Of a DNA stretch of 64,000 nucleotides, positions 1,289 through 38,049 are shown piece by piece (the stretch's first letter is position 1; each line of letters opens with the position of its first letter). Made by a program: the position numbers and the translations under genes. The DNA lies in assembly GCF_023055435.1 (NCBI RefSeq), contig NW_025963957.1, forward strand, positions 4,402,001-4,466,000, given 5' to 3'. Below the pieces are notes generated by a model. It saw only the letters and a program-made list of their open reading frames with translations, was not told the DNA's origin and made no database searches. This stretch comes from Haliotis rufescens. Lineage: Eukaryota.

Positions 1289-1344
1289 ACCCCTTAAAGA
1301 ATAGAGGCACCAATTTCCCACATGCCTTCCGTGAAAAGTGTCTA

Positions 1345-1530
1345 TGCTGGTCGTAAGAGGCCACAAACGGGATCGTGTGATCAGGCTCGCTGTCTTGGCT
1401 GATGTATGTCATCGTATCAAAATTGCGTGGATCGATGCTCATGATGTCAATCACTGGGTTGTCTGGTCCAAACACGATTATTTACAGACCGCCGTCATAT
1501 AGCTGGAATAATGCTGAGTGCGGCGTTACA
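1345..1530 (+). mobile_element. Structured-head SINE-like element, 5'-truncated
   Basis: Matches the family body ...gtctggtccaaacacgattatttacagaccgccgtcatatagctggaata...gcggcgtta. Confidence 0.8.
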
Positions 1531-3010: not shown

Positions 3011-3255
3011 CTCCTCCACAGACACAGGGTGTAACCCACGACAAACAAGTTGCCTCTTATGACTAGCAATAGGGTCATGGCGACACATGTCACCCCAGGT
3101 ACACACATGGTATCTAAAAGTAGAACATTTCTATTGTAATATGAATATTTGACGCAACAGTTTGGCAACTCCTGAAAAAGACACTGTTGTCTAATAGCCT
3201 ACAGTTCATATAAATTCTGCCTCAAGACATTACTTACTTTTTTGCACGTTTACAG

Positions 3256-5339: not shown

Positions 5340-7699
5340 TTGTGTGTTATCACATCACGCCATGCATTTCATGCATTCAATAAAATGATATTGGCATCAA
5401 TAGTATGATTGTTCTTCATTCTATGGTGTTATATTTGGTGCTATTTTTGTATGAAAAGAAAATTCGTTCAAATGTGACACGTATAATACGTAGAAAAGAT
5501 TATACCCTGACGTCATTTACACGAACGTGTAGATACCCTTCTAGCATATAGCACTTGCATTTCGCGCTCGCTCACACAAATAATCAATCATTTTGAGAAA
5601 TAATGTTGGTACACAACCATTGTATCATGCAAAGCCTTCATAGTTACCGAAGTTTAATTTAATTTATTCAAGAAATAATGTGAAGTCTACTTACTCAATT
5701 ATGGTGAACTCTATCGATATCTATAAAAGTCTTCTGGAAACTGGTCTTAGACTAGTTTTGGTCATGTGGCCTGTTGTTTCGCTACAACCGTTGGTTTAGG
5801 CTGGTTTATGTGTTGACATTTGACATCCTTTCTGAAGAGAAAGACATCTGAAAACCAACCATATATCTTTGGTAAAACATCCTTACTTTGAACATCTCTT
5901 TTGACATCGTCGTTGTCAACTGACTTTTTTTACCATCGTATTTAAACCGTCATTAATATTAAAACATGTAGTTTTATTCTGAACCAGGGTTTGGCTTCCT
6001 AGGTATAAGAAACTTGTCTATAAATAGGCGATCTGCGAATTCCATGACTAATTAAACGTCCAACTTCAATATACTTATCGATAGAACTAGATGCATAATC
6101 AATGGTACGAATGTACTGCAGCTCTTATCAATAAAACGTTAATTTGTCAAAGAGTTATACTGGATTTTTCGCCATGAACAATATTTTGCCACGAATGTTT
6201 TGCTGAAATTAATATTAGTGTGCAACAACAGTTATGGATGCCTGGTGACAGTAAACGCTTACAGATGATTTGAATTTTTGTATGAGGATTCTGGTGCTTG
6301 AAAGAAGAGACTATACATAAGAGCTACAGATGGCTGAGAAAGTTATCATTTTAAGCCAAAGTAAACTTTTCAAGTTTTAATCTATGTCTCTCTATTGCAA
6401 ACAGTTTGTAAACTGTTCAGCAAAAGTAAAGACAAGTGTTAAGTCAGCGAAGGCAGCATGCGTCCTGAATATCACAATCATAAGGGAAGTCGGGAACTGG
6501 AATCTTGTCGGATGAGAGCCAGGTGTTCCATATTCTTCTCGCGGTACAAAAGCTTCAGACTGTCACACCTAAATAAAGATATCTTACCATACCGGGATTT
6601 CGTGTTTCTATATTGAACATCGTTTATCTGAGTATAGGTTTGTATAAAATACAGAAACACTCCCCCATATATTTAATCTTTAATTTAGAGAAACAAAATC
6701 TTAGAATTTCATTTTGAAATCGTCGAATTCTTAATGTCTTTTACAGGAAATGTGTTTTCAATTATCCCAATTTGACAAATTTTCAAGAATAATTTATCGG
6801 CTTCATTAAGGAGATAAACAATTCGTTCTGTACGATTTGCAAGATGCTATGTTGAATTGATGAACGGAGCTTTTCAGTACATCTAGTTAGCATAACACCA
6901 CGCAAATCTTAGAAAACGAAGTATCTATAAACATTGTAACATGAAAGTTATTTGAAATCAATGTTTAGGAGGACCCCATTTAATCAGCGCATGAGCCAAC
7001 CGATCTGTCGTTAGCAAAACGTCTCCTCGTGCTTACCTTCGGCAGCATCCATGACATGGGGTGCCGCGAAACCGATCACTGGTTTCAAGGTACCCTTGTC
7101 ATGATGGTTCATTTTACCAAAGATTTGGTCACGTTTCCACGCCAATTTGTAAGAAAGGAAATAACAAGACAAAACTTTCATAAATTCAATTCTTTAACGC
7201 AGTTCCTTTTTTCATTTGCAATGTGTAAGCACGAGTATCGTCAAAACAGAAATAATCAAATTAAGAAAGACGAATAATATCGTTGGACCCTTATCCAAGA
7301 TAGTGTCATCTCGCCTGAAATGGAGGTGGAGACAGAAACAAGTAAAGTCAAACACATGCAAGTTTTAAACGTTCAATATTTACACCAAGGGTCCTCGTGG
7401 TGTACTATTCAGTGTCGTCGGAGTGACTCGTCTCTTGGGAGCCTGACTCAAAACCTCGGACATCAAGCCATTATGGATGTGACAGGATGACCTTGTTCAG
7501 GGTACAATTGTAAGAATAGGTGGTCCTATGTTTTTTAATGCATGTTAACTATATTACCACCCAATGTTACGATTAACTTGTAAGATTTTGTAAATTTCCT
7601 TATATTATTGTAAAATTTGACCACGCTCCACACTGTCTGTCAATGGTGTAAGGGAGGTAACTCTCACTAGAGTTAGTCGTATATGCGTTTGTTTATTTG

Positions 7700-7948
7700 A
7701 TTGTTTAACGCCATAATAGCAATATTGCAGCCATATGAAGGCGGTCTGTGAATAATCGAGTCTGGACGAGACAATCCAGTGATTGACATCATGAGCATCG
7801 AAAAACGCAATTGGGATACGATGACATTCATCAACCAAGTCAGCAAGCCTGACCACCCGATCCGGTTAATCGCCTCTCACGACAAGCATAGTCGCCTTTT
7901 ACGGCAAGTATGGGTTGCTGAAGATATATTCTACCCGGATCTTCATAG
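7700..7948 (-). mobile_element. Structured-head SINE-like element (further copies: 8468-8643 -, 24389-24632 +, 34478-34668 -, 43158-43424 -, 43466-43690 -, 45061-45330 +, 45790-46015 +, 47008-47435 +, 59605-59725 -)
   Basis: Recurrent ~240-bp consensus cccgtgaagatccggggtagaataggtcttcagcaacccatgcttgtcgtaagaggcgactaacggg...gcggcgttaaacaacaaac. Confidence 0.85.
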
Positions 7949-9514: not shown

Positions 9515-10955
9515 TACTCAACAACAAAAGTTCCCGTGACACCAATATTTTAATGTATTTTTCAAACAAGTAAAGTTTGGTTTTCAATATTGTAGTGCAT
9601 GTATGGAATCAAGTCACAAAAACGCAACTGCTACAGAAAAGCATGCATTACATGCAAAAGTTGACTTTTATGCAAGCCCCATGCACTTCACTACCAAAGA
9701 ATGGGTATAAAAACATGTGCGTTAACGGGATTCCATTTGCATTGTTTAGCATCGTTCTGACAACAACCACTCAGAAAAACAACAAAATTACGCAATTATT
9801 CAACATTACGAAAGGCCACGCCTGTCCTAAAACGAGCGTCTGCGAGCCATTGGTATGCTTGAAGCAGGATCAGGTCAATGTGATGTTGCAAGACAATTTA
9901 ACGTCCACAGAAAACATTTGGTGTTTATGGCAACGTTGGCAACATACGAATACAGTCAGAGACCATCCTCGGAGTGGCAGGCCACGTGTAACCAATAATC
10001 GTCAAGACGATTGGATTCGAACAACACACCTACGAAATCGATTCCAGCCAGCAACAGTGACTGCAAGAAGCATCCCTGGCCTTCAACGAATATCTGCACA
10101 AACCGTACGTCGCCGCCTCAGATGTGCAGGGATTGTCGCCAGAAGACCCGCCAGACATCCAATTTTGACAGGAAACCACTGTCAAACACGTCTACAGTGG
10201 TGCAGTGGTGTTTTCACCTCAGCCAAAGCGATGGAGGGATTCGAGTGTACCGACGTCGAGGTGAACGTTACGTCAATCATTGTGTCATGGAAGATGATCG
10301 GTTCGGGGACGGCAGCGTTATGGTATGGGGTGAGATTACAGCAAGACAGAGGACCCGTTTGATAGTGGTAGAGGGAAATCGCGACGAGATCATCGGCCTT
10401 ATTGTTGTACCGTTTTTGCGTCGTCATGGCCCAGGCATTACTTTTCAACATGACAACGCCCGGCCTCATATTGCTCGACTTGTTCAGGATTCGCTTCAAC
10501 AAAACAACGTGAATGTCATCCCCTGGCCGGCTCACTCCCCTGATCTCTCACCAATCGAGCACATGTGGGATGAGATGGATCGGCGCCTTAGACGTCAACC
10601 ACGTGTTCCACAGACACTCTAGGAACTTCGAAACATGCTCCAGCTGATATGGACAGATATCCCGCAGGACTTTGTGCAACGCCTTGTCCATTCCATGAGA
10701 CGAAGATGTGTTGCTTGCATCGCAATCAGAGGAAGACACACACGCTATTGATTTGTAAATTGACATTTTGGCATGTTCATATGTTTTTTTTAATGAAATC
10801 ACGCATTTTCCGAAGTCAGTTTGACAAATTAAAACCATTTGAACACTTACAGGAGTCTTTTATCTGTTGCAAACTGAAATTGTTTCAGATTTGGTAAAAA
10901 ACATAACTTTGCATTAAATATTATTCAATGCCACAGGAACTTTTGTTGTTCAGTA
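9515..10955 (+). mobile_element. Tc1/mariner DNA transposon with decayed transposase
   Basis: TA TSDs; TIRs tactcaacaacaaaagttcc / ggaacttttgttgttcagta; motifs PRSGRPR, FQHDNARPH and WPAHSPDLSPIEHMW; frameshifted. Confidence 0.92.
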
Positions 10956-15188: not shown

Positions 15189-15252
15189 TCAACTTTTCAA
15201 GACTTTATAATATACTGGAACTTAACACCTTTGTATCCCTGGCGTTACAGGC

Positions 15253-18200
15253 CCTCATGAAGAGCAAACCACGTGGTGAGTGCTGGGTAACGCTAATCGC
15301 TCTTCCCCCGTGTGGACCCGGGGTAGAATGTGTGCTCAGCACCCAATTGCTTGTCGTATGAAGCGACTAAATTGGGAAGCCCGTTTGCCGTGGGTTGCGT
15401 CCCTGTGTCGGGGGAGGAAGGGAGTCTGGTAATTAAGGGCACTGGTTCCTGGAACTGTGTTCCTTTGCCCAACACACCACTTTGACCCTTACTTCGCCTA
15501 GACGGGTGGTAGGATGGGCCTGGTCTTATCAATCGACTGGTCACGCTAAGCCCTGTGCGTTATAGTGTATATGCACACGTGTGTTATATTTTAATGTATA
15601 TTTTGGTCTTGGTCATGCATAACTCTATGAATTCACAATTTTGGATGGAATAAATTGCCTACAGTCTTATGCCAGAAGGCGGTGGCTCATGGGCCAATCT
15701 GGTGATGTTGACCTCTGTATTCTGTATGTCTCAACTTTCTTGTCATGGACTGAGCCAGCCTGGCACTACATCTGGTAGACAAATATAGCTATTCAAGTCA
15801 TATTCGCTGGAGTATAACATCCATGTATCCCTGGTGTTTGCATGCTGGAAATCCGATTTGCTTACAACACTGTCCTTGTTGACACTTGATGGTGGGTGGG
15901 GAGCAGGTATGCTGAAACACTTTTCTTTCACCATGCCAACCCAACAATCTGGTTCAATTCGCAACGACAAAAAAAAAGACGTCTTGAAGATGATGATTCT
16001 GGGAACATTCCCAACAAATACGATTCATGGGCCCGATTCCTGGTGATCGAGGCTGGTGACAAACAACCTTTAAGATTGAATCATTTGCTATTTCAAAAGC
16101 TATGAACGGACATTGTGGAGAAGTGAAAAATGTAACCCGACTCCGTAGTGGTTCCATTCTTGTTGAATGTGTGAAGAAGCAGCAATCTCTTAATCTCTTG
16201 TCCAACAGTCAGACTGCCAATGTTGAGGTTGCTGTTTCAGCACATAAGACTCTAAACTCCAGTCAAGGCACTGTTCGTGACAGAGCTCGATGTCCGAACA
16301 AGAAACTGTTACAGAGTTGAAGGATCAAGCAGTGACATCTGTGAAACGTTTTACTAAAAAGATCGATGGTGTTATCACTCCCCTGAACACCTATCTCTTC
16401 ACATTTGATCGAACAACTATTCCTCGTTCAATTAAAGCTGGTTATGTTAACATCGGAGTGGAGGTGTATGTCCCCAATCCACTCTGATGTTATACTTGCC
16501 AAAAGTTTGGCTATGGTTCCAAATCCTGTGATTGCCCTAAGGTTTGCCAGCGTTGTGGTGGTAAACATGACAGCAACGAATGTAGGGCAGATGTGAAGTG
16601 TGTCAACCGTAATGACCAACTTGAAGCCTGGTCAAAGTCCTGTCCTGTATGGAAAACTGAGTCCCAGATATTAAAACTGAAACTCAACAACAATATTTCG
16701 TATCTGGAAGTAGAAAAAACAAGTAACTAACCAGTTACCATCAACTATTACTTATTCTGCTGCAGTGTCTCGTTCTGTTTCCACTTCATCAATCGAATGT
16801 CAGACTGAATTGACATGGGTTCACTCTGATCAACCAGTAGAAACAACATCTGTCATTCAGCCCCACAAATCAGATTGTCAGCCCAGTACCACATCTTCAG
16901 AATCACAGACTGATTCACAATCTTTACCAGTTATTGACAAACCAGGCAATGTTCATATGAGTAAGACAGAAAGAAAACAACTAAAGAGACAACATCTCAG
17001 GAGACCCTCTCCTTCAGAGGTGCCTGTCCATAATTCCTTTGGACCTTTGGATATGGAGGTAACTCCGTCTTCACAGGCCAGTGCTAGGAGCTCATCTTCT
17101 TCACGCTCGCGTGTGAGGTCACCTATTGAGCCACCATGCCTCATATGATTCAGTGGAATTACAGAGGACTCAGGAAAAACTTTAATGAGATAGTTTAGGA
17201 CTTTAAACCATCAGCACTGTATCTCCAAGAGAGTATAACAATGTATTTCGTTTTCGCCCCAAGGTGATAAAGCTGCTGGATCAAGGCATCATCCCCTCAA
17301 TACAAATCTTCAAGCTGTAGCTGTCCGACTTACATTGCACTTACTTTGTGCTCCTTGTATATTCTTCCTTCAAATACTCTTCAGCAGGCTGATCTTCAGA
17401 ATCTCTTTGATCAGTTACCAAAGCCCTGTATCATCATGGGCGATTTAAATGGGCATAACCCCCTATGGGGAAGTCCAAATACAAACAGTAAGGGAAAAGT
17501 GCTTGAAGACTTTATTTCTGACAATAATCTCTGCATATTTAATGACGATTCAAACACTTATTTACATATTCAGCACTGGATCTGTCAATCACAGATTCAA
17601 ACCTTTACAAGGAATTTGAATGGTCAGTTCATGATGACCTCTGTGGGAGTGACCATTTCCCTACCATCCTTAAACCTGTTAACCCTACTGACCATCCAAC
17701 AACAACAAGGTGGAATTTTACATTATATGAATTATTATCCACTGAAAAACTAACACCTGACATTTTTCAACATGTTCAAGATCCGATACAGTTGTTTTCG
17801 GACATGCTGAATGAATTTGCTGATGAAACAATTCCCAAGTCCTCTGCAAATCCACGTATTCGTAAACCATGGTTTAACAACGAATGCAAACAGGCACGAA
17901 AATATAGGAAAAAAGCGGAAACATATTTTCCCCGCCATCCTACAGTCCATAATTTAGATAATGTTAAAACTACAAATGCAAGGCACGAAGTGCTTTTAAA
18001 CAAAGTAAGCGTCAGTCTTGGAGGAACTATGTCTCCAAAATACATTCCCGCACGCCTATATCCAAGGTGTGGAATATGATACAAAAAATAAAAGCCAAAG
18101 GTTCAAAATCATCTGTTCACCATTTTAAGGAAGGTGACACGTCGTTTTTAACGGATAAAACTGATATTGCAAATATGCTTGGAGAAACGTTAGCAAACCA

Positions 18201-20399
18201 TTCTTCAACGTCTAATTATGTCCCGGTGTTTCAAACAATTAAGAAACAACAGGAAAAGATAAAAGTAAATTTCACTTCTGATAATTGTGAAGACTATAAT
18301 GAAGTCTTCTCATTACATGAGCTACATACCGCCCTTGGGCAAGCTCATGACACACCAACGGGAGCTGATAACATACACTACCAGCTTTTCAAACATTTAC
18401 CTGAATCATGTCTGGAGACACTTTTAGATATATTTGATCAAATATGGACATCAGGGAATTTTCCTCCTTCATGGCATAATGCCATTGTAGTCCCAATACC
18501 AAAGCCTGGCCGGGATCATACAGATCCCTCTAACTATCGACCTATATCCTCAACCAGTCGCGTGTGTAAAACCATGGACCGAATGGTGAATAATAGATTA
18601 ATTTGGTAATAAAACCAATAATCTGATTACAAATATACAATGTGGTTTCCGAAAAAATCGAAGTACTATCGACCATTTAGTACAATTAGAATCCTTAGTA
18701 AAACATGCTATTGTAAACAAACAACATGTAGTGTCACTCTTTTTCGATCTTGAGAAAGCCTATGCTACTACTTAGAAGCATGGCATTCTAAAGGATTCAC
18801 ATGATTTTGGTTTGAGAGGCAGTTTGCCTCAGTTGATGGTTCTTTATTTGTGGACGATTTTAACATTTCTTGTCGCGGGAAAAACATGCACACTTTTGAG
18901 AAACAACTGCAATTGTGTCTCAATAAAATCCACAAATGGTCGCTTGGTAACGGCTTCAAATTTTCTAAAACTAAAACTAATTGTATACACTTCTGCAGAA
19001 AATATAGACAGCACAAAGACCCAGAACTATTTCTATCTGACACACCCATCAAAGTTGTTGAGGAGACCAAGTTCTTGGGGCTTATTTTTGGCCGCCACCT
19101 GACGTTCTTGCCACATATAAAATATCTCACGGCAAAGTGTCTGAAAGCACCAGACTTGCTGAAAGTCGTATCACACTCTAAATGGGGTGGGGATCAGACA
19201 ACCCTCCTCCATTTGTACAGATGTTTGATCCGCCCAAAATTGGACTACGGTTCCATCATTTATGGTGGAGCCTGAAAAAGTAACTTATAGAAACTAGATT
19301 CAATTCATCACAAGTGCTTGAGGCTCTCCTGTTGATAGTCTGTATGTAGAGGCTGATGAGCCTCCGTTGAAACAACGTCGTTTAAAACTTGCACTACAAT
19401 ATATCACAAAATTAAAATCAAACCCGTCAAATCCAGCAGTTGATTGCATTTTTAATCCTCACTACGAGGCATTATTCCAAACTAAACCGAAGCTGGTTCC
19501 ACCTCTGGAGATCAGATTACAACCGCATATAACAGCAGCTCATATTGACCTTGATCTTATTGCAACCTACCGATTACTGTCTGCGGCTCCTTGAAAATTA
19601 GTCAAACCAAAAGTAGACCCTACGCTTACTAAATTTAAAAATTCTGATACAAATCAGCTAATTTTTCAACAAGAATATGTCCAGTTACGCTCTAAATTCT
19701 CACCGCTCCATCTTCACAAATGGATCGAAGCATATTTTGCTTGACTGTACAGACCTTTCTCTCACAAGGGATACCTGTTATCATTTGACTTCTTTAAAGG
19801 CTCTTTTTATAACTATAAATGCTCGTTTAATTCTCAATTTGTTAAAAGAAATAGATTTATTTGATAAATTTTGAATTTTGAATTGTTTTTTAATTAGTGT
19901 GATGTTATTAACAATTGAGATTTTAAAGGCTGTGCCACTCAGGGGGTTAAAGTAGTGTAAAATTATTGTCCAGTGGCACGTGAGTCCTTCTTTGTTGAAG
20001 TGTATAAAATCAACTAGTGTTTTAATGTATTGATTGTGCTTCTATTTTTTAATTTTTGTTAGCAATACATACAACCACTGGTGACCAAACTGATGGTATA
20101 AATCCTGCCGGGAATCATGCAGGAAGCAAAACCACTGTAAGTCCCCATGATTCCCAGTTAGGTGGTCTAGCTTTGGTTGCTAGTGGTCTATAGCCTAGTT
20201 TTAATTTTTAGGAACTTATCTACTAAAAATTCTTTGTTTTATAATTGCTTGGGTTTGTTTTATATCTAAACCCTCATATTTACCTGACTGTTTTACTGTC
20301 CTTCGTCGACAGGTCTTTAATTATAGTAACTACCTTGTTCTCATCGCGATATGGCAGCAATATTGCCGATGCTATGTACACTTTTAACTCACTCACTCA
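15253..20399 (+). mobile_element. Full-length decayed non-LTR retrotransposon, I/Nimb-like (gag-like ORF1 ~15920-17148; APE-RT-RNase H remnant ORF2 ~17147-19874)
   Basis: 16-bp direct repeat ccctggcgttacaggc at 15237-15252 and 20400-20415; (ACTC)n tail; ORF1 RLRSGSILVEC and YVPNPL followed by a CCHC-like stretch; ORF2 GDLNGHNPLWG, PSNYRPIS, FFDLEKAY, VDDF and IRPKLDYGS. Confidence 0.9.
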
Positions 20400-20415
20400 C
20401 CCTGGCGTTACAGGC

Positions 20416-23759: not shown

Positions 23760-25849
23760 CAGTATAAGTGTGAACAGGACAATAGACTCAATTTAAGGCG
23801 GGTGTGAATATGTTATATGGGAGTGTAATAGAGTTGACACGGCTGCAAAATGATAATGTCACGCATAGTGGATTCACACCTAAATCTACGTCTGCTGCAG
23901 TCGTGTAACGGAACAGTAAACTTTCCCTCCTGTTCTGTGTGTGATGTTGTCACTTGTTGAATGCACCAGCTGAAAAACAGGAAACAGAATTGAAAAAAAC
24001 TTATTCTGTCCCAACCAACTGTCATCCAAAGTTTGGCTGCTTCACATGGAAAGTTTGTATTTGTACTCACCATTAGGACATCAAAAGACAAAACCATCAC
24101 ACATTACATCACACGAAGCGACAGTGGTTCCCACATTTATGCATGTTTGGAAATCAACGTGTCATCCGAGGCCTATATGACAAACGTTGAAATGTAGGTA
24201 TAATTTAGCCGCCAAACTAAATTGAAATATATTTCGCAGGTCATGAAACAAAGAACTTTTAAGTCACTATGAACATATATGACGGAGGTCTGTGAACATG
24301 GCCATCGTTTTCATGTATTTTCTAACGTGTGAAATAATCGTAAATGTCGTTCATGGATGACATGATTCCATTGACATCGTGTGTGGCAGACCCGTGAAGA
24401 TTCCGGGGTAGAATAGGTCTTCAGAAACCCATGCTTGCCGTAAAAGACGACTATGCTTGTAGTAAAAGGCGACTAACGGGACTTGGTTGATGCATGTCAT
24501 CGATCCCAATTGCGTGGATCGATACTCATGATATTAATCACTGGATTGTCTGGTCCAGACTCGATTATTTACAGACCGCCGTCATATAGCTGGGATATTG
24601 CTGAGTGCAACAACAAACTAACCAACAAACCAATCGTGTGTGGCAAGGATAAGATTGATCCTGTTTCATACGCTTCTGCTTGTTCGGGATTAGATAAATG
24701 GAAGATTACCATATTGACAAAAAATTAGCATTTATTTCAATGGTTCGGTAAAATAACTGCGTTTTATTACCAGCATTGCCTCATTAGTGTGCAGCAACCA
24801 CGTCAGTGACGTTATAAAGTAATTAGTAACATATGGCGAGGATATCCACTTTACAACAGACCATTGAAGTTTCCTCAGTATTTGTTAAACCAGACGCACT
24901 GCATTGAGTTGCTATCAGGTTTAAATTTACAATGGTTTAAATGGAGTATAATGTAAAGGTTGTGAATATGACGTGTGTTTGTCCAGACCATATCTCCAAA
25001 ACTGATAGGTATTCTTTCATGACACTTTGCACACAAAAAGACCAGTTTGCCTTTTGCTACTTAGGGGTGTTTAGAAAAAAGAAGAATTATGTTTCCATGG
25101 CAACAACTTTGATTTTGACTGTTCATATTGGTGTGTATCTGACATAGAAAAACAAAGTTCAGAATCCCAATTCCATGGAATTCCACTACTCTTGTATACG
25201 GACAGACAGATTAGAGAGAAATACTCTCATCAAGTTTGACTTAATGTGACAGTCAGATGATTTGTGCTTTCGAATCTGTGGGGGCCGAGGGATTGTCATC
25301 TTCTGATGACTTTTGTTCGTTTTGGGGACGATTTCGCCTGTTTTACGCTATTTTCTTATTACCCATCTAATTTTGGTCAAGCATTGAGGTTCCGCGAAAC
25401 GTGTGTAGTCGACTAGGACCGCAAACGGAGGGGCCGAGGTTGTTGCAGGCTCAAGCAAAGACATATATCTATATACGTCTTTAGATCAAGTCTGTACTTT
25501 TGGAGGACCTCAAACTGAGATCATATATGGGACCTCTATCCTCTATCTAGAATTTGATAGACAGGACTAAAGTGAAAATTTACCATATTAACGCGCCGCT
25601 TTCAAAGTTTTGAATACTATATTTGCACTCAGATTGGCATTTTTAGAATTTGATAAGTAGCTGTGAAGACAAGATATTTTATGGATGACAACTTATTTAT
25701 TCTATTATGATGCGATGTTCCTTAATATATCTAATCTTTATTTCACATACTGAAGAGGCCACAGGCCTCTAGTACAAGTTGAAGAATATACAGTTTTATA
25801 CAGTTTATGTACATATCTCACCAGATCACCTCACGTCATTCCACCTTGC

Positions 25850-37817: not shown

Positions 37818-38049
37818 AAGCATGAATACGCATATTCAGAATGGTTGTACTTACATGAGTAATTCAACACACAGTCGAGCATGCAACTTGGTTAGAATAT
37901 CTAACTAAGAGATGTTGCACTATGATATATGCTTCACATTGCATTCTACAATGTTGGTGATAATTTTACACACGTACAATGACGACAGCCAACACATTGT
38001 CATGTATAGCTTACTTCGTGTGAGATGAAACGGGGTTTAATGTCGCCAG

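What the first reader, a model, noticed from the sequence alone, without database searches (positions are those of the whole stretch)
15303..15378. Structured RNA module shared by the LINE 5' UTR and a tRNA-less SINE-like family: candidate ribozyme or processing element
The SINE head (for example 39726-39792, 45063, 24391) folds as a four-way junction: P1 cccgt/acggg, P2 tgaagatc/ggtcttca with loop cggggtagaata, P3 gca/tgc with loop accca, P4 gtcgt/gcgac followed by taa. The P2 and P3 loops are complementary (gggt/accc), and the 47008 copy changes both to ggttt/aaacc. The LINE carries the same loops and P4 but a different closing stem (ttccc/gggaa). Full-length copies begin at the base of P1, which suggests a defined 5' end from self-cleavage, a nuclease block or an internal promoter. 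The fold does not match the HDV, hammerhead or twister consensus as I read it. HDV-like ribozymes at LINE 5' ends are established precedent. The sequence may already be in repeat libraries without a described function.
Basis: partly seen in the sequence, partly recalled or inferred. Interest (0 to 1): 0.8.

Follow-up and report, generated by a model that had tools for sequence, protein, structure and literature searches.

The report
LINE-derived folded head of a SINE
A roughly 75-base leader segment shared by a LINE and a very abundant tRNA-less SINE is the already published "LP" SINE head; one of its hairpins is kept by compensating changes, but the LINE's start is set by a small HDV-like ribozyme just upstream, not by this module.

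Summary
Window 15303-15378 is a decayed copy of a ~73-nt module. The module lies 56 nt inside a full-length, TSD-flanked LINE (15250-20400). It also forms the first ~70 nt of a very abundant non-tRNA SINE.

SINEs with such a LINE-derived head were published in 2016 as "LP-SINEs", including Haliotis families (PMC4758252). That paper proposed a promoter role and gave no structure in the passages I read.

New here:
- Only helix P2 is supported by compensatory change, at three pairs across about four lineages.
- P3, P4, P1 and the loop-loop pairing are invariant or only broken.
- The cited 47008 "double change" is private to one insertion.
- In intact LINE copies the 58 nt before the module are a P4-less HDV-like ribozyme. 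Its best Rfam match has E = 0.001, below the gathering score.
- 32 of 35 aligned LINE copies begin exactly at its G1.
- All 100 LINE-type modules listed keep this ribozyme upstream, so the module does not make the LINE's 5' end.

Best reading: an RNA-level 5' leader element captured by the SINE, not a ribozyme. Function is untested. Earlier agents of this scan reached similar readings on other pieces of this genome.

The parts
15238..15249 (+). 5' copy of the LINE's target-site duplication (cctggcgttaca). The next two bases, gg, are also repeated at the 3' site, so the TSD is 12-14 bp.
   Evidence: Read directly.
15250..20400 (+). Full-length but decayed LINE. Order: ribozyme, LP module, rest of the 5' UTR, ORF1-like frames (about 15900-17150), endonuclease (17346-), reverse transcriptase (to about 19275), and a (CACT)n tail.
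   Evidence: 26 of 26 unrelated loci start aligning at 15245-15250. Multi-copy similarity ends at about 20400. Pfam gives Exo_endo_phos_2 at E = 1.2e-14 and RVT_1 at E = 3.2e-4, the latter below Pfam's cut-off.
15250..15305 (+). Decayed copy of a 58-nt, P4-less HDV-like ribozyme. P1a is 15250-15256 and the P2 3' strand is 15299-15305. In this copy P1 has a mismatch and L3 is partly deleted.
   Evidence: Alignment to 32 intact copies. Intact copy L035:1502-1558 matches RF02682 at E = 0.00099, RF00094 at E = 0.25 and RF01787 at E = 4.9. The window copy itself gives no Rfam match.
15306..15378 (+). LP head module inside the LINE 5' UTR, which is the finding. P2 arms are 15311-15317 and 15332-15338 (5 of 7 pairs left in this copy). 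The invariant loop L2 is 15318-15331. P3 is 15339-15341 with 15348-15350. The C-run L3 is 15342-15347. P4 is 15353-15357 with 15363-15367. The 3' G-run is 15374-15376.
   Evidence: The covariance model R1 scores this copy 87.6 bits.
20401..20412 (+). 3' copy of the LINE's target-site duplication.
39725..39952 (+). SINE copy with a single P4. The head is about 39726-39795, and its P2 has one mismatch (GGTCTCC).
   Evidence: R1 scores it 91.2 bits.
45063..45325 (+). SINE copy with the P4 hairpin duplicated.
24390..24621 (+). SINE copy with P4 duplicated, flanked by a 13-bp TSD (atcgtgtgtggca). The first element base is G, before ACCCGTG.
43159..43424 (-). SINE copy with head.
43463..43690 (-). 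SINE copy with head.
7696..7945 (-). SINE copy with head.
45793..46016 (+). SINE copy with a mutated head.
47008..47427 (+). SINE copy with an internal insertion. It carries the private GGTTT/AAACC loop changes.

Best explanation
IDENTITY. The flagged stretch is a decayed copy of the 'LP' head module. This is a ~73-nt segment of LINE leader that an abundant non-tRNA SINE carries as its first ~70 nt.

HOW THE LINE'S 5' END IS MADE. In this genome's LINE the module lies directly behind a 58-nt HDV-like ribozyme that lacks P4. That ribozyme, not the module, sets the LINE's 5' end. Shown: copies begin at its G1. Inferred: it cleaves itself out of a longer transcript.

HOW THE MODULE WORKS. The module acts as RNA. 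A 7-8-bp hairpin (P2) keeps its pairing through compensating substitutions between lineages. It presents an invariant loop that begins CCGGGGUAGAAU. An invariant C-rich loop and a second hairpin (P4) follow.

Most likely (inferred) it is a cis-acting 5' leader fold of the retrotransposition template. It would give a stable 5'-proximal structure or protein platform that protects or marks the RNA's 5' part and so favours full-length copies. The SINE captured it by recombination with a LINE RNA that began at the module. The same DNA may also carry the SINE's internal promoter, which is the published proposal and is untested. It is not a self-cleaving ribozyme.
For: IDENTITY.
- The SINE head and the LINE module align over about 70 columns with 82% mean column identity.
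- There is no tRNA by ARAGORN, no Rfam match at E up to 10, and no A or B box better than chance: 902 and 1813 of 2000 shuffles do as well.
- The LP-SINE description matches: a head of about 70 bp from the start of LINE 5' UTRs, with Haliotis families named (PMC4758252).

RIBOZYME.
- 32 of 35 aligned LINE copies start GGCACTC right after unrelated flanks.
- Three HDV-type Rfam models all hit L035:1500-1559, each with the P4 positions deleted.
- G1 pairs with U, and P1 and P2 have 7 bp each (read).
- Among 32 copies (9 distinct sequences), changes shared by several copies lie only at ribozyme nt 43 and 51, which are linker positions.

RNA-LEVEL CONSTRAINT ON THE MODULE.
- In P2, three pairs show changes on both sides: AU/UA/GC, GC/AU and UG/CG/AU.
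- 0 of 500 shuffles reach the covariation score of 0.147 (shuffle mean 0.061).
- Slid controls score 0.095 or less.

NOT A 5'-END MAKER.
- 100 of the 100 listed LINE-type modules keep the ribozyme's 3' end directly upstream.

PRECEDENT.
- Stable folded 5' modules raise the insertion efficiency of R2 templates, probably by limiting decay from the 5' end (PMC11331408, abstract).
Against: - No experiment bears on function.
- Only about four related lineages of one genome were compared, so the shuffle control overstates significance.
- P3, P4, P1 and the loop-loop pairing have no compensatory change.
- RNAalifold finds only a weak consensus, -3.1 kcal/mol.
- The SINE and the LINE prefer different minimum-energy folds.
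- A SINE variant with a P2 mismatch (GACGATC) is common among the 475 matches.
- A SINE this successful needs a precise transcription start, which a promoter explains more simply.
- The reads I could lay gave no information on 5' ends.
Confidence: 0.5

Rival explanations
1. A purely DNA-level internal promoter, probably for RNA polymerase II, as proposed when LP-SINEs were named. The ~70 bp would bind transcription factors and fix the start site at the element's first base. Any RNA structure would be incidental.
For: The SINE begins precisely at the module in 33 unique full-length copies. It has at least 6,335 exact-head copies, which calls for an internal start signal. The published LP hypothesis draws an analogy to Pr77 (PMC4758252). 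The loop and P3/P4 sequences are invariant, as expected for binding sites.
Against: Compensatory changes at three P2 pairs are not expected for a DNA motif. In the LINE, no copy among the 100 listed starts at the module, so a start site there does not feed LINE propagation. No Inr-, DPE- or A/B-box-type motif was recognised; only A/B boxes were tested formally.
Confidence: 0.3
2. One reading: the module is itself a self-cleaving ribozyme, or a processing signal such as a tRNA-like RNase P substrate, that generates the 5' end at the base of P1.
For: SINE copies start at the base of P1. The topology is cloverleaf-like and about tRNA-sized. HDV-like ribozymes at LINE 5' ends are established, and one sits next door.
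Against: 100 of the 100 listed LINE-type modules retain the upstream 58-nt ribozyme. Efficient cutting at the module's 5' edge would strip it from new copies. There is no match to any Rfam ribozyme or tRNA model at E up to 10 and no ARAGORN call. An extra hairpin is tolerated in 14 of 33 SINE copies. Covariation supports only P2.
Confidence: 0.05
3. The module is a strongly diverged tRNA-derived head with a polymerase III promoter, later copied into LINE leaders.
For: It has four helices in tRNA order and is about 73 nt long. The loop contains GGUAGA, which by my recollection (no call) resembles a D-loop. The consensus-like SINE copy has no run of four or more T.
Against: ARAGORN finds no tRNA in a window holding at least 8 heads. 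The Rfam tRNA model gives nothing at E up to 10. The best A and B box matches are no better than shuffles. The same module sits in a 5-kb LINE behind a ribozyme.
Confidence: 0.05

Closest known systems
LP-SINEs ('LINE promoter' SINEs) of gastropods and bivalves, including Hdi_LP and Hmi_LP of Haliotis (Matetovici et al. 2016, PMC4758252)
   Same: The head is not tRNA-derived. It is about 70 bp homologous to the start of LINE 5' UTRs, with homology limited to that segment. Copies are TSD-flanked and end in a short tandem-repeat tail. Function is unknown.
   Different: Nothing essential. I could not compare letters with the published consensus because figures and supplements are not held. The passages I read give no secondary structure for the head and mention no ribozyme upstream of it in a LINE.
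Pr77 / L1TcRz hallmark of trypanosomatid L1Tc, ingi, NARTc and RIME
   Same: A 5'-terminal segment of about 77 nt is shared by LINEs and their short non-autonomous partners. It is linked to 5'-end formation by an HDV-like ribozyme and to an internal promoter (listings and abstracts; cited in PMC4758252).
   Different: There, one and the same 77 nt are both promoter and ribozyme, and the short elements carry the ribozyme. Here the ribozyme (58 nt) and the shared module (~73 nt) are separate neighbours, and the SINE carries only the module.
HDV-like ribozymes at the 5' ends of non-LTR retrotransposons (R2, L1Tc), and 'minimal' HDV-like ribozymes that lack P4
   Same: This applies to the 58 nt upstream of the module, not to the module. 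The element starts at G1. There is a G-U at the base of P1, and the L3 and J4/2 core aligns to Rfam HDV models. P4 is absent, as in minimal variants (PMC10879173 passage).
   Different: The score is below Rfam's gathering thresholds (28.5 bits against 44). Activity was not tested. That paper's introduction leaves open whether minimal variants are eukaryotic, bacterial or viral in origin. This one heads a eukaryotic LINE.
tRNA-derived SINE heads
   Same: Position at the SINE's 5' end, size and cloverleaf-like topology.
   Different: No tRNA model match, no A or B boxes, and the segment is shared with a LINE leader.
Structured 5' modules of R2 templates
   Same: A stable fold at the template's 5' end that affects the yield of full-length insertion (PMC11331408, abstract).
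   Different: That module is the HDV-like fold itself. A role of this kind for the LP module is only inferred.

Membership tests
LP-SINE (Matetovici et al. 2016) | The head is homologous to the 5' part of a LINE 5' UTR, and homology is limited to about 70 bp. | tested here: met
   The SINE heads align with LINE modules over about 70 columns. A full SINE query finds no further LINE similarity in the window.
LP-SINE (Matetovici et al. 2016) | The head is not derived from tRNA, 5S or another small RNA. | tested here: met
   ARAGORN finds none. Rfam finds none at E up to 10. A and B boxes are no better than shuffles.
LP-SINE (Matetovici et al. 2016) | Copies are TSD-flanked, some are 5'-truncated, and they end in 3' short tandem repeats, as expected for LINE-dependent mobilisation. 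| tested here: met
   The copy at 24390 has a 13-bp TSD, and the tails are (CAAA)n-like. 34 of 70 hits are 5'-truncated.
LP-SINE (Matetovici et al. 2016) | Sequence identity to the published Hdi_LP or Hmi_LP consensus. | not testable with these tools
   The consensus is in figures and supplements that are not held. That the host is an abalone comes only from earlier notes of this scan.
HDV-like ribozyme (the 58 nt upstream of the module) | A nested double pseudoknot of P1, P1.1, P2 and P3, with the conserved L3 and J4/2 core that includes the catalytic C. | tested here: met
   Rfam alignments of three HDV-type models cover P1, P3, L3 and the GCUAA of J4/2. P2 (GAAGAGC/GCUCUUC) and P1.1 (CC/GG) were read by me from the same letters.
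HDV-like ribozyme (the 58 nt upstream of the module) | The cleavage site 5' of G1 (a G-U pair at the base of P1) coincides with the element's 5' end. | tested here: met
   32 of 35 aligned copies begin GGCACTC after unrelated flanks. G1 pairs with U37.
HDV-like ribozyme (the 58 nt upstream of the module) | Reaches Rfam's curated gathering score. | tested here: not met
   RF02682 scores 28.5 bits against 44, and RF00094 scores 22.1 against 50. The shortfall goes with the missing P4.
HDV-like ribozyme (the 58 nt upstream of the module) | Self-cleavage activity. | not testable with these tools
   This needs in vitro transcription.
Known self-cleaving ribozymes (the module itself) | A match to an HDV, hammerhead, twister, twister-sister, pistol, hatchet or hairpin model. 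| tested here: not met
   No Rfam match overlaps the module at E up to 10 in the SINE, the window LINE or the intact LINE copy.
tRNA-derived SINE head | A tRNA-like sequence with A and B boxes. | tested here: not met
Exoribonuclease-resistant RNA (xrRNA) | A ring-like pseudoknotted fold that stalls Xrn1. | not testable with these tools
   No Rfam match was found. The loop-loop pairing is possible in all lineages but has no covariation.

The most novel reading that the evidence does not exclude
The LP module would be a new class of structured 5'-terminal RNA. It would comprise a covarying hairpin with an invariant loop, a loop-loop pseudoknot and a second hairpin, conserved from molluscs to insects and vertebrates. 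It would define and protect retrotransposon RNA 5' ends by stalling 5'-to-3' exonucleases, as xrRNAs do. Read-through transcripts would be trimmed back to the base of P1. That would explain the precise SINE start without a promoter. It would also explain why LINE copies whose 5' end is already shielded by the HDV-like fold keep the extra 58 nt.
Probability: 0.12. Interest if true: 0.8.

Novelty: already known. Interest (0 to 1): 0.4.

Why it matters
How SINEs without a small-RNA head are transcribed and get a precise 5' end is an open question. So is why one ~70-nt leader recurs at the start of unrelated LINE clades in several phyla; both were posed in 2016 and found unanswered in my searches.

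This locus adds three testable facts. One hairpin of the module is maintained as RNA. The module is not what cuts or starts the LINE RNA. A P4-less HDV-like ribozyme does that job in a eukaryotic LINE. [quoted passage not shown]

Tried and rejected
- **Rfam.** At gathering thresholds on the whole window the only match is a tRNA-like hit at 40652-40722.
- **Minimum free energy.** Folds of the window copies are not distinguishable from shuffles.
- **RNAalifold.** On the 22-copy alignment it gives a weak consensus and does not recover P2.
- **Alternative helix.** Pairing the P3 loop with the G-run after P4 gives 66% of cells paired, with only single-copy double changes. A check on 20 copies of the third lineage did not uphold the compensating pair I had suspected.
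- **More LINE or SINE lineages with the module in this genome.**
  - One search found the third lineage.
  - One search found only uncompensated SINE variants.
  - One search found 4 mutated ribozyme copies and no second ribozyme family.
  - Model R1, run over the 264 kb I held, gave 104 matches and no robust new lineage. It gave two single decayed variants and a two-copy variant head at window 1289-1381 and 61581-61673.
- **Other species.** One metagenome scan gave 0 matches. One viral-contig scan gave a single chance match inside a phage gene. I did not use the second metagenome scan because exact patterns cannot reach diverged heads.
- **Reads.** The only raw RNA runs offered are small-RNA libraries. 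They show few reads, mostly antisense, and nothing about 5' ends. The contig runs show only that SINE sequence is abundant and embedded in many flanks.
- **LINE clade.** I did not determine it. The window copy is too broken after the RT domain, and I ran no further search on it.
- **Literature.**
  - 'LP-SINE', 'LP SINEs', 'LINE-derived head' and 'Nimb-17' occur in only one paper of the library.
  - The search for HDV-like ribozymes with Nimb, mollusc or SINE listed 20 of 176 papers; by title and abstract none describes this arrangement.
  - The xrRNA search listed 10 of 94 papers. The word retrotransposon occurs in only one of the ten, a general review.
  - The library holds open-access papers only. 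The figures and supplements of PMC4758252, which hold the published consensus sequences, could not be seen.
Full report
WHAT IS AT THE COORDINATES. It lies in a eukaryotic, repeat-rich genome of 1.33 Gb. Earlier notes of this scan call the genome an abalone; I did not verify the species. The loop motif GGGGTAGAATAGGTC occurs 10 times in the window at up to 3 mismatches, against 1.07 expected by chance.

THE LINE.
- The stretch belongs to a full-length but decayed LINE at 15250-20400.
- The same 12-14 bases, cctggcgttaca(gg), flank it at 15238-15249 and 20401-20412.
- 26 of 26 unrelated genomic loci begin to align at window 15245-15250.
- Multi-copy similarity ends at about 20400.
- Inside are ORF1-like frames, an endonuclease (Exo_endo_phos_2, E = 1.2e-14) and a reverse transcriptase (RVT_1, E = 3.2e-4, below Pfam's cut-off).
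- The tail is (CACT)n, which is not the SINE's tail.
- The module therefore starts 56 nt inside the LINE, not at its end.

THE 56-58 nt BEFORE THE MODULE ARE AN HDV-LIKE RIBOZYME.
- In an alignment of 35 distinct 5' ends, 32 begin GGCACTCGTGAAGAG directly after unrelated flanks. The window copy and its paralogue L033 are mutated there, and L034 is truncated.
- The window copy gives no Rfam match.
- The intact copy L035:1502-1558 matches RF02682 (HDV-F-prausnitzii) over the whole model at E = 0.00099 (28.5 bits, gathering score 44). It matches RF00094 (HDV ribozyme) at E = 0.25 and RF01787 (drz-agam-1) at E = 4.9.
- In each of these matches the P4 positions are deleted.
- From those letters I read: P1 with 7 bp, with G1 opposite U; P2 with 7 bp (GAAGAGC/GCUCUUC); P3 with 3 bp closing a 7-nt loop; P1.1 with 2 bp; and a GCUAA aligned to the J4/2 core.
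- Among 32 copies (9 distinct sequences), the only changes shared by several copies are at nt 43 and 51, which are linker positions. Changes in helices or in L3 are singletons.
- HDV-like ribozymes without P4 ('minimal' ones) are known from metagenomic samples, and their origin was left open (PMC10879173, passage read).
- Activity was not tested here.

THE SINE.
- A SINE of 230-260 bp gives 21 BLAST pieces in the window, 8 of them with heads.
- Across the window and the fetched loci, 36 of 70 hits are full length, giving 33 unique copies. All 33 align from the same first bases, (G/A)ACCCGTG, after unrelated flanks. The other 34 hits are 5'-truncated.
- The copy at 24390 has a 13-bp TSD.
- One head variant alone has 6,335 exact matches to a 35-place pattern in the genome.
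- No tRNA is called. The A and B box consensus motifs, which I recalled from memory, match no better than shuffles, and the consensus-like copy has no run of four or more T.
- 14 of the 33 full-length copies carry a 22-nt tandem duplication of the P4 hairpin.

IT IS A PUBLISHED KIND OF ELEMENT.
- Matetovici et al. 2016 (PMC4758252, passages read) describe 'LP' (LINE promoter) SINEs in Littorina, Haliotis (Hdi_LP, Hmi_LP) and oysters.
- Their first ~70 bp are homologous to the first 68 bp of the 5' UTRs of Nimb-17_LMi, I-3_DR and RTE-9_CPB.
- The authors propose a promoter role, note the Pr77/L1TcRz analogy and call for experiments.
- In the passages I read they give no secondary structure for this head.
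- The published consensus sequences are in figures and supplements that I could not see, so identity by letters is untested.
- The terms for this element occur in no other paper of the library.

IS THE FOLD REAL?
- Energy. The intact LINE module prefers a different fold with two hairpins (z = -2.64). The window copies are near chance.
- Comparison. I aligned 22 chosen copies from about four lineages: the SINE; the main LINE form and a subform; the window's own older LINE lineage; and a third, old lineage found.
Only P2 has pairs that change on both sides: columns 9-32 (AU 7, UA 7, GC 4), 10-31 (GC 12, AU 8) and 13-28 (UG 8, CG 7, AU 6).
- P3, P4 and the loop-loop helix never covary and depart only through broken cells.
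- 0 of 500 shuffles reach the covariation score (0.147 against a mean of 0.061), and slid controls stay at 0.095 or less. With so few related lineages this control is generous.
- Several lineage-level states break the model. P3's A-U is lost in the LINE subform. P4 has a C-A mismatch in the commonest SINE form. The loop-loop U-A exists only in the SINE.
- P1 has 5 Watson-Crick pairs in the SINE. In the LINEs it is 3 G-C pairs plus wobbles, and there the same G-run can instead pair with the P3 loop. I could not decide between the two.

THE 47008 'DOUBLE CHANGE'.
- Its exact form occurs 3 times in the genome, all on contig C179 about 140 kb apart. These are segmental duplicates of one insertion.
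- In the first 100 of the 6,335 heads of one subtype, 13 have a changed P2 loop, 7 have a changed P3 loop and none has both (my count of the listing).

WHAT THE MODULE IS NOT.
- A pattern that displays the 12 bases before LINE-type modules has 443 matches. All 100 listed show the ribozyme's 3' end directly upstream. The pattern's first place excludes C, so a quarter of any unrelated flanks would be missed.
- If the module cut at its own 5' edge, were cut there, or fixed the transcription start there, new LINE copies would lack the ribozyme. None was seen.
- No ribozyme family of Rfam matches the module.

BEST READING AND RIVALS.
- The module is an RNA-level leader element with a maintained hairpin and an invariant loop. 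The SINE took it over from a LINE whose RNA began at the module, as the published Nimb and RTE consensus sequences do.
- I take its most likely role to be a stable 5'-proximal fold or protein platform of the retrotransposition template. This is inferred. The precedent is that stable 5' folds raise R2 template efficiency (PMC11331408, abstract).
- A DNA-level promoter in the same bases remains likely for the SINE and is the main rival.
- A self-cleaving or RNase P-type role, and a diverged tRNA origin, are disfavoured.
- The boldest reading not excluded is an exonuclease-stalling fold that defines the SINE's 5' end.

READS.
- The run search offered only small-RNA raw libraries plus contig sets of uncertain type.
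- I laid them on L012:300-2900, which holds one LINE 5' end and two SINEs, all on the minus strand.
- The small-RNA runs gave 9 and 186 reads.
- Reads begin in numbers at 1563 (63 of 74) and at 834 (21 of 22), both on the plus strand. They are therefore antisense to a SINE and to the LINE leader, and look like piRNAs.
- The contig runs show very deep SINE coverage that runs on into many different flanks.
- None of this speaks to 5' ends.

EARLIER NOTES OF THIS SCAN. The scan has flagged this module on at least eight other pieces of this genome. The follow-ups there reached the LP-SINE identification, the upstream HDV-like ribozyme and 'only one helix supported'. I re-derived all three from my own calls. 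One note's claim of two pseudoknots conserved across animals could not be tested here.

Noticed in passing
window 15250-15305, and L035:1502-1559: A 58-nt HDV-like ribozyme without P4 heads this LINE family. [quoted passage not shown]
   Followed up: yes
whole window (G000:C179:4402001-4466000): Stretches of the window recur at 100% identity elsewhere on the same contig. The SINE locus recurs at C179:4362804, 4503031 and 4582796, and the LINE 5' end at 4557418, with offsets of about 61, 79 and 140 kb. This is either a large segmental duplication or uncollapsed haplotypes.
   Followed up: no
window 40652-40722 (+): An Rfam tRNA match (32.3 bits, just above the gathering score of 29) that ARAGORN does not call. 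It may be the tRNA-like head of another SINE family or a tRNA pseudogene.
   Followed up: no
G000:C13:43989870-43990088, and L026:1409-1577: Tandem arrays with a 48-bp period, built from the first part of the SINE head (P1 to P3). The head has seeded minisatellites.
   Followed up: no
window 45063-45152, 24390-24480 and others: 14 of 33 full-length SINE copies have a 22-nt tandem duplication of the P3 3' arm plus the P4 hairpin. Both the single and the duplicated form are abundant.
   Followed up: partly
L012:1563-1593 and L012:834 onward (+ strand): Small-RNA reads of run X20 pile up antisense to a SINE body (63 molecules) and antisense to the LINE leader (21). They look like piRNAs.
   Followed up: no
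window 9577-10622 (+): Broken Tc1/mariner-type transposase frames. The motif ...HDNARPH...SPDLSPIEH... is my own reading; I ran no family search.
   Followed up: no
window 1289-1381 and 61581-61673 (+): Two SINE copies share a different, G-run-less 5' part ahead of the duplicated P4 region. This may be a subfamily with a replaced or strongly diverged head.
   Followed up: no
window 38001-40000: Extreme GC skew (-0.64) in a 2-kb bin. I did not inspect it.
   Followed up: no
window 3034-3111 (-): A second, heavily decayed copy of the LINE leader module, scoring 14.2 bits with model R1.
   Followed up: no
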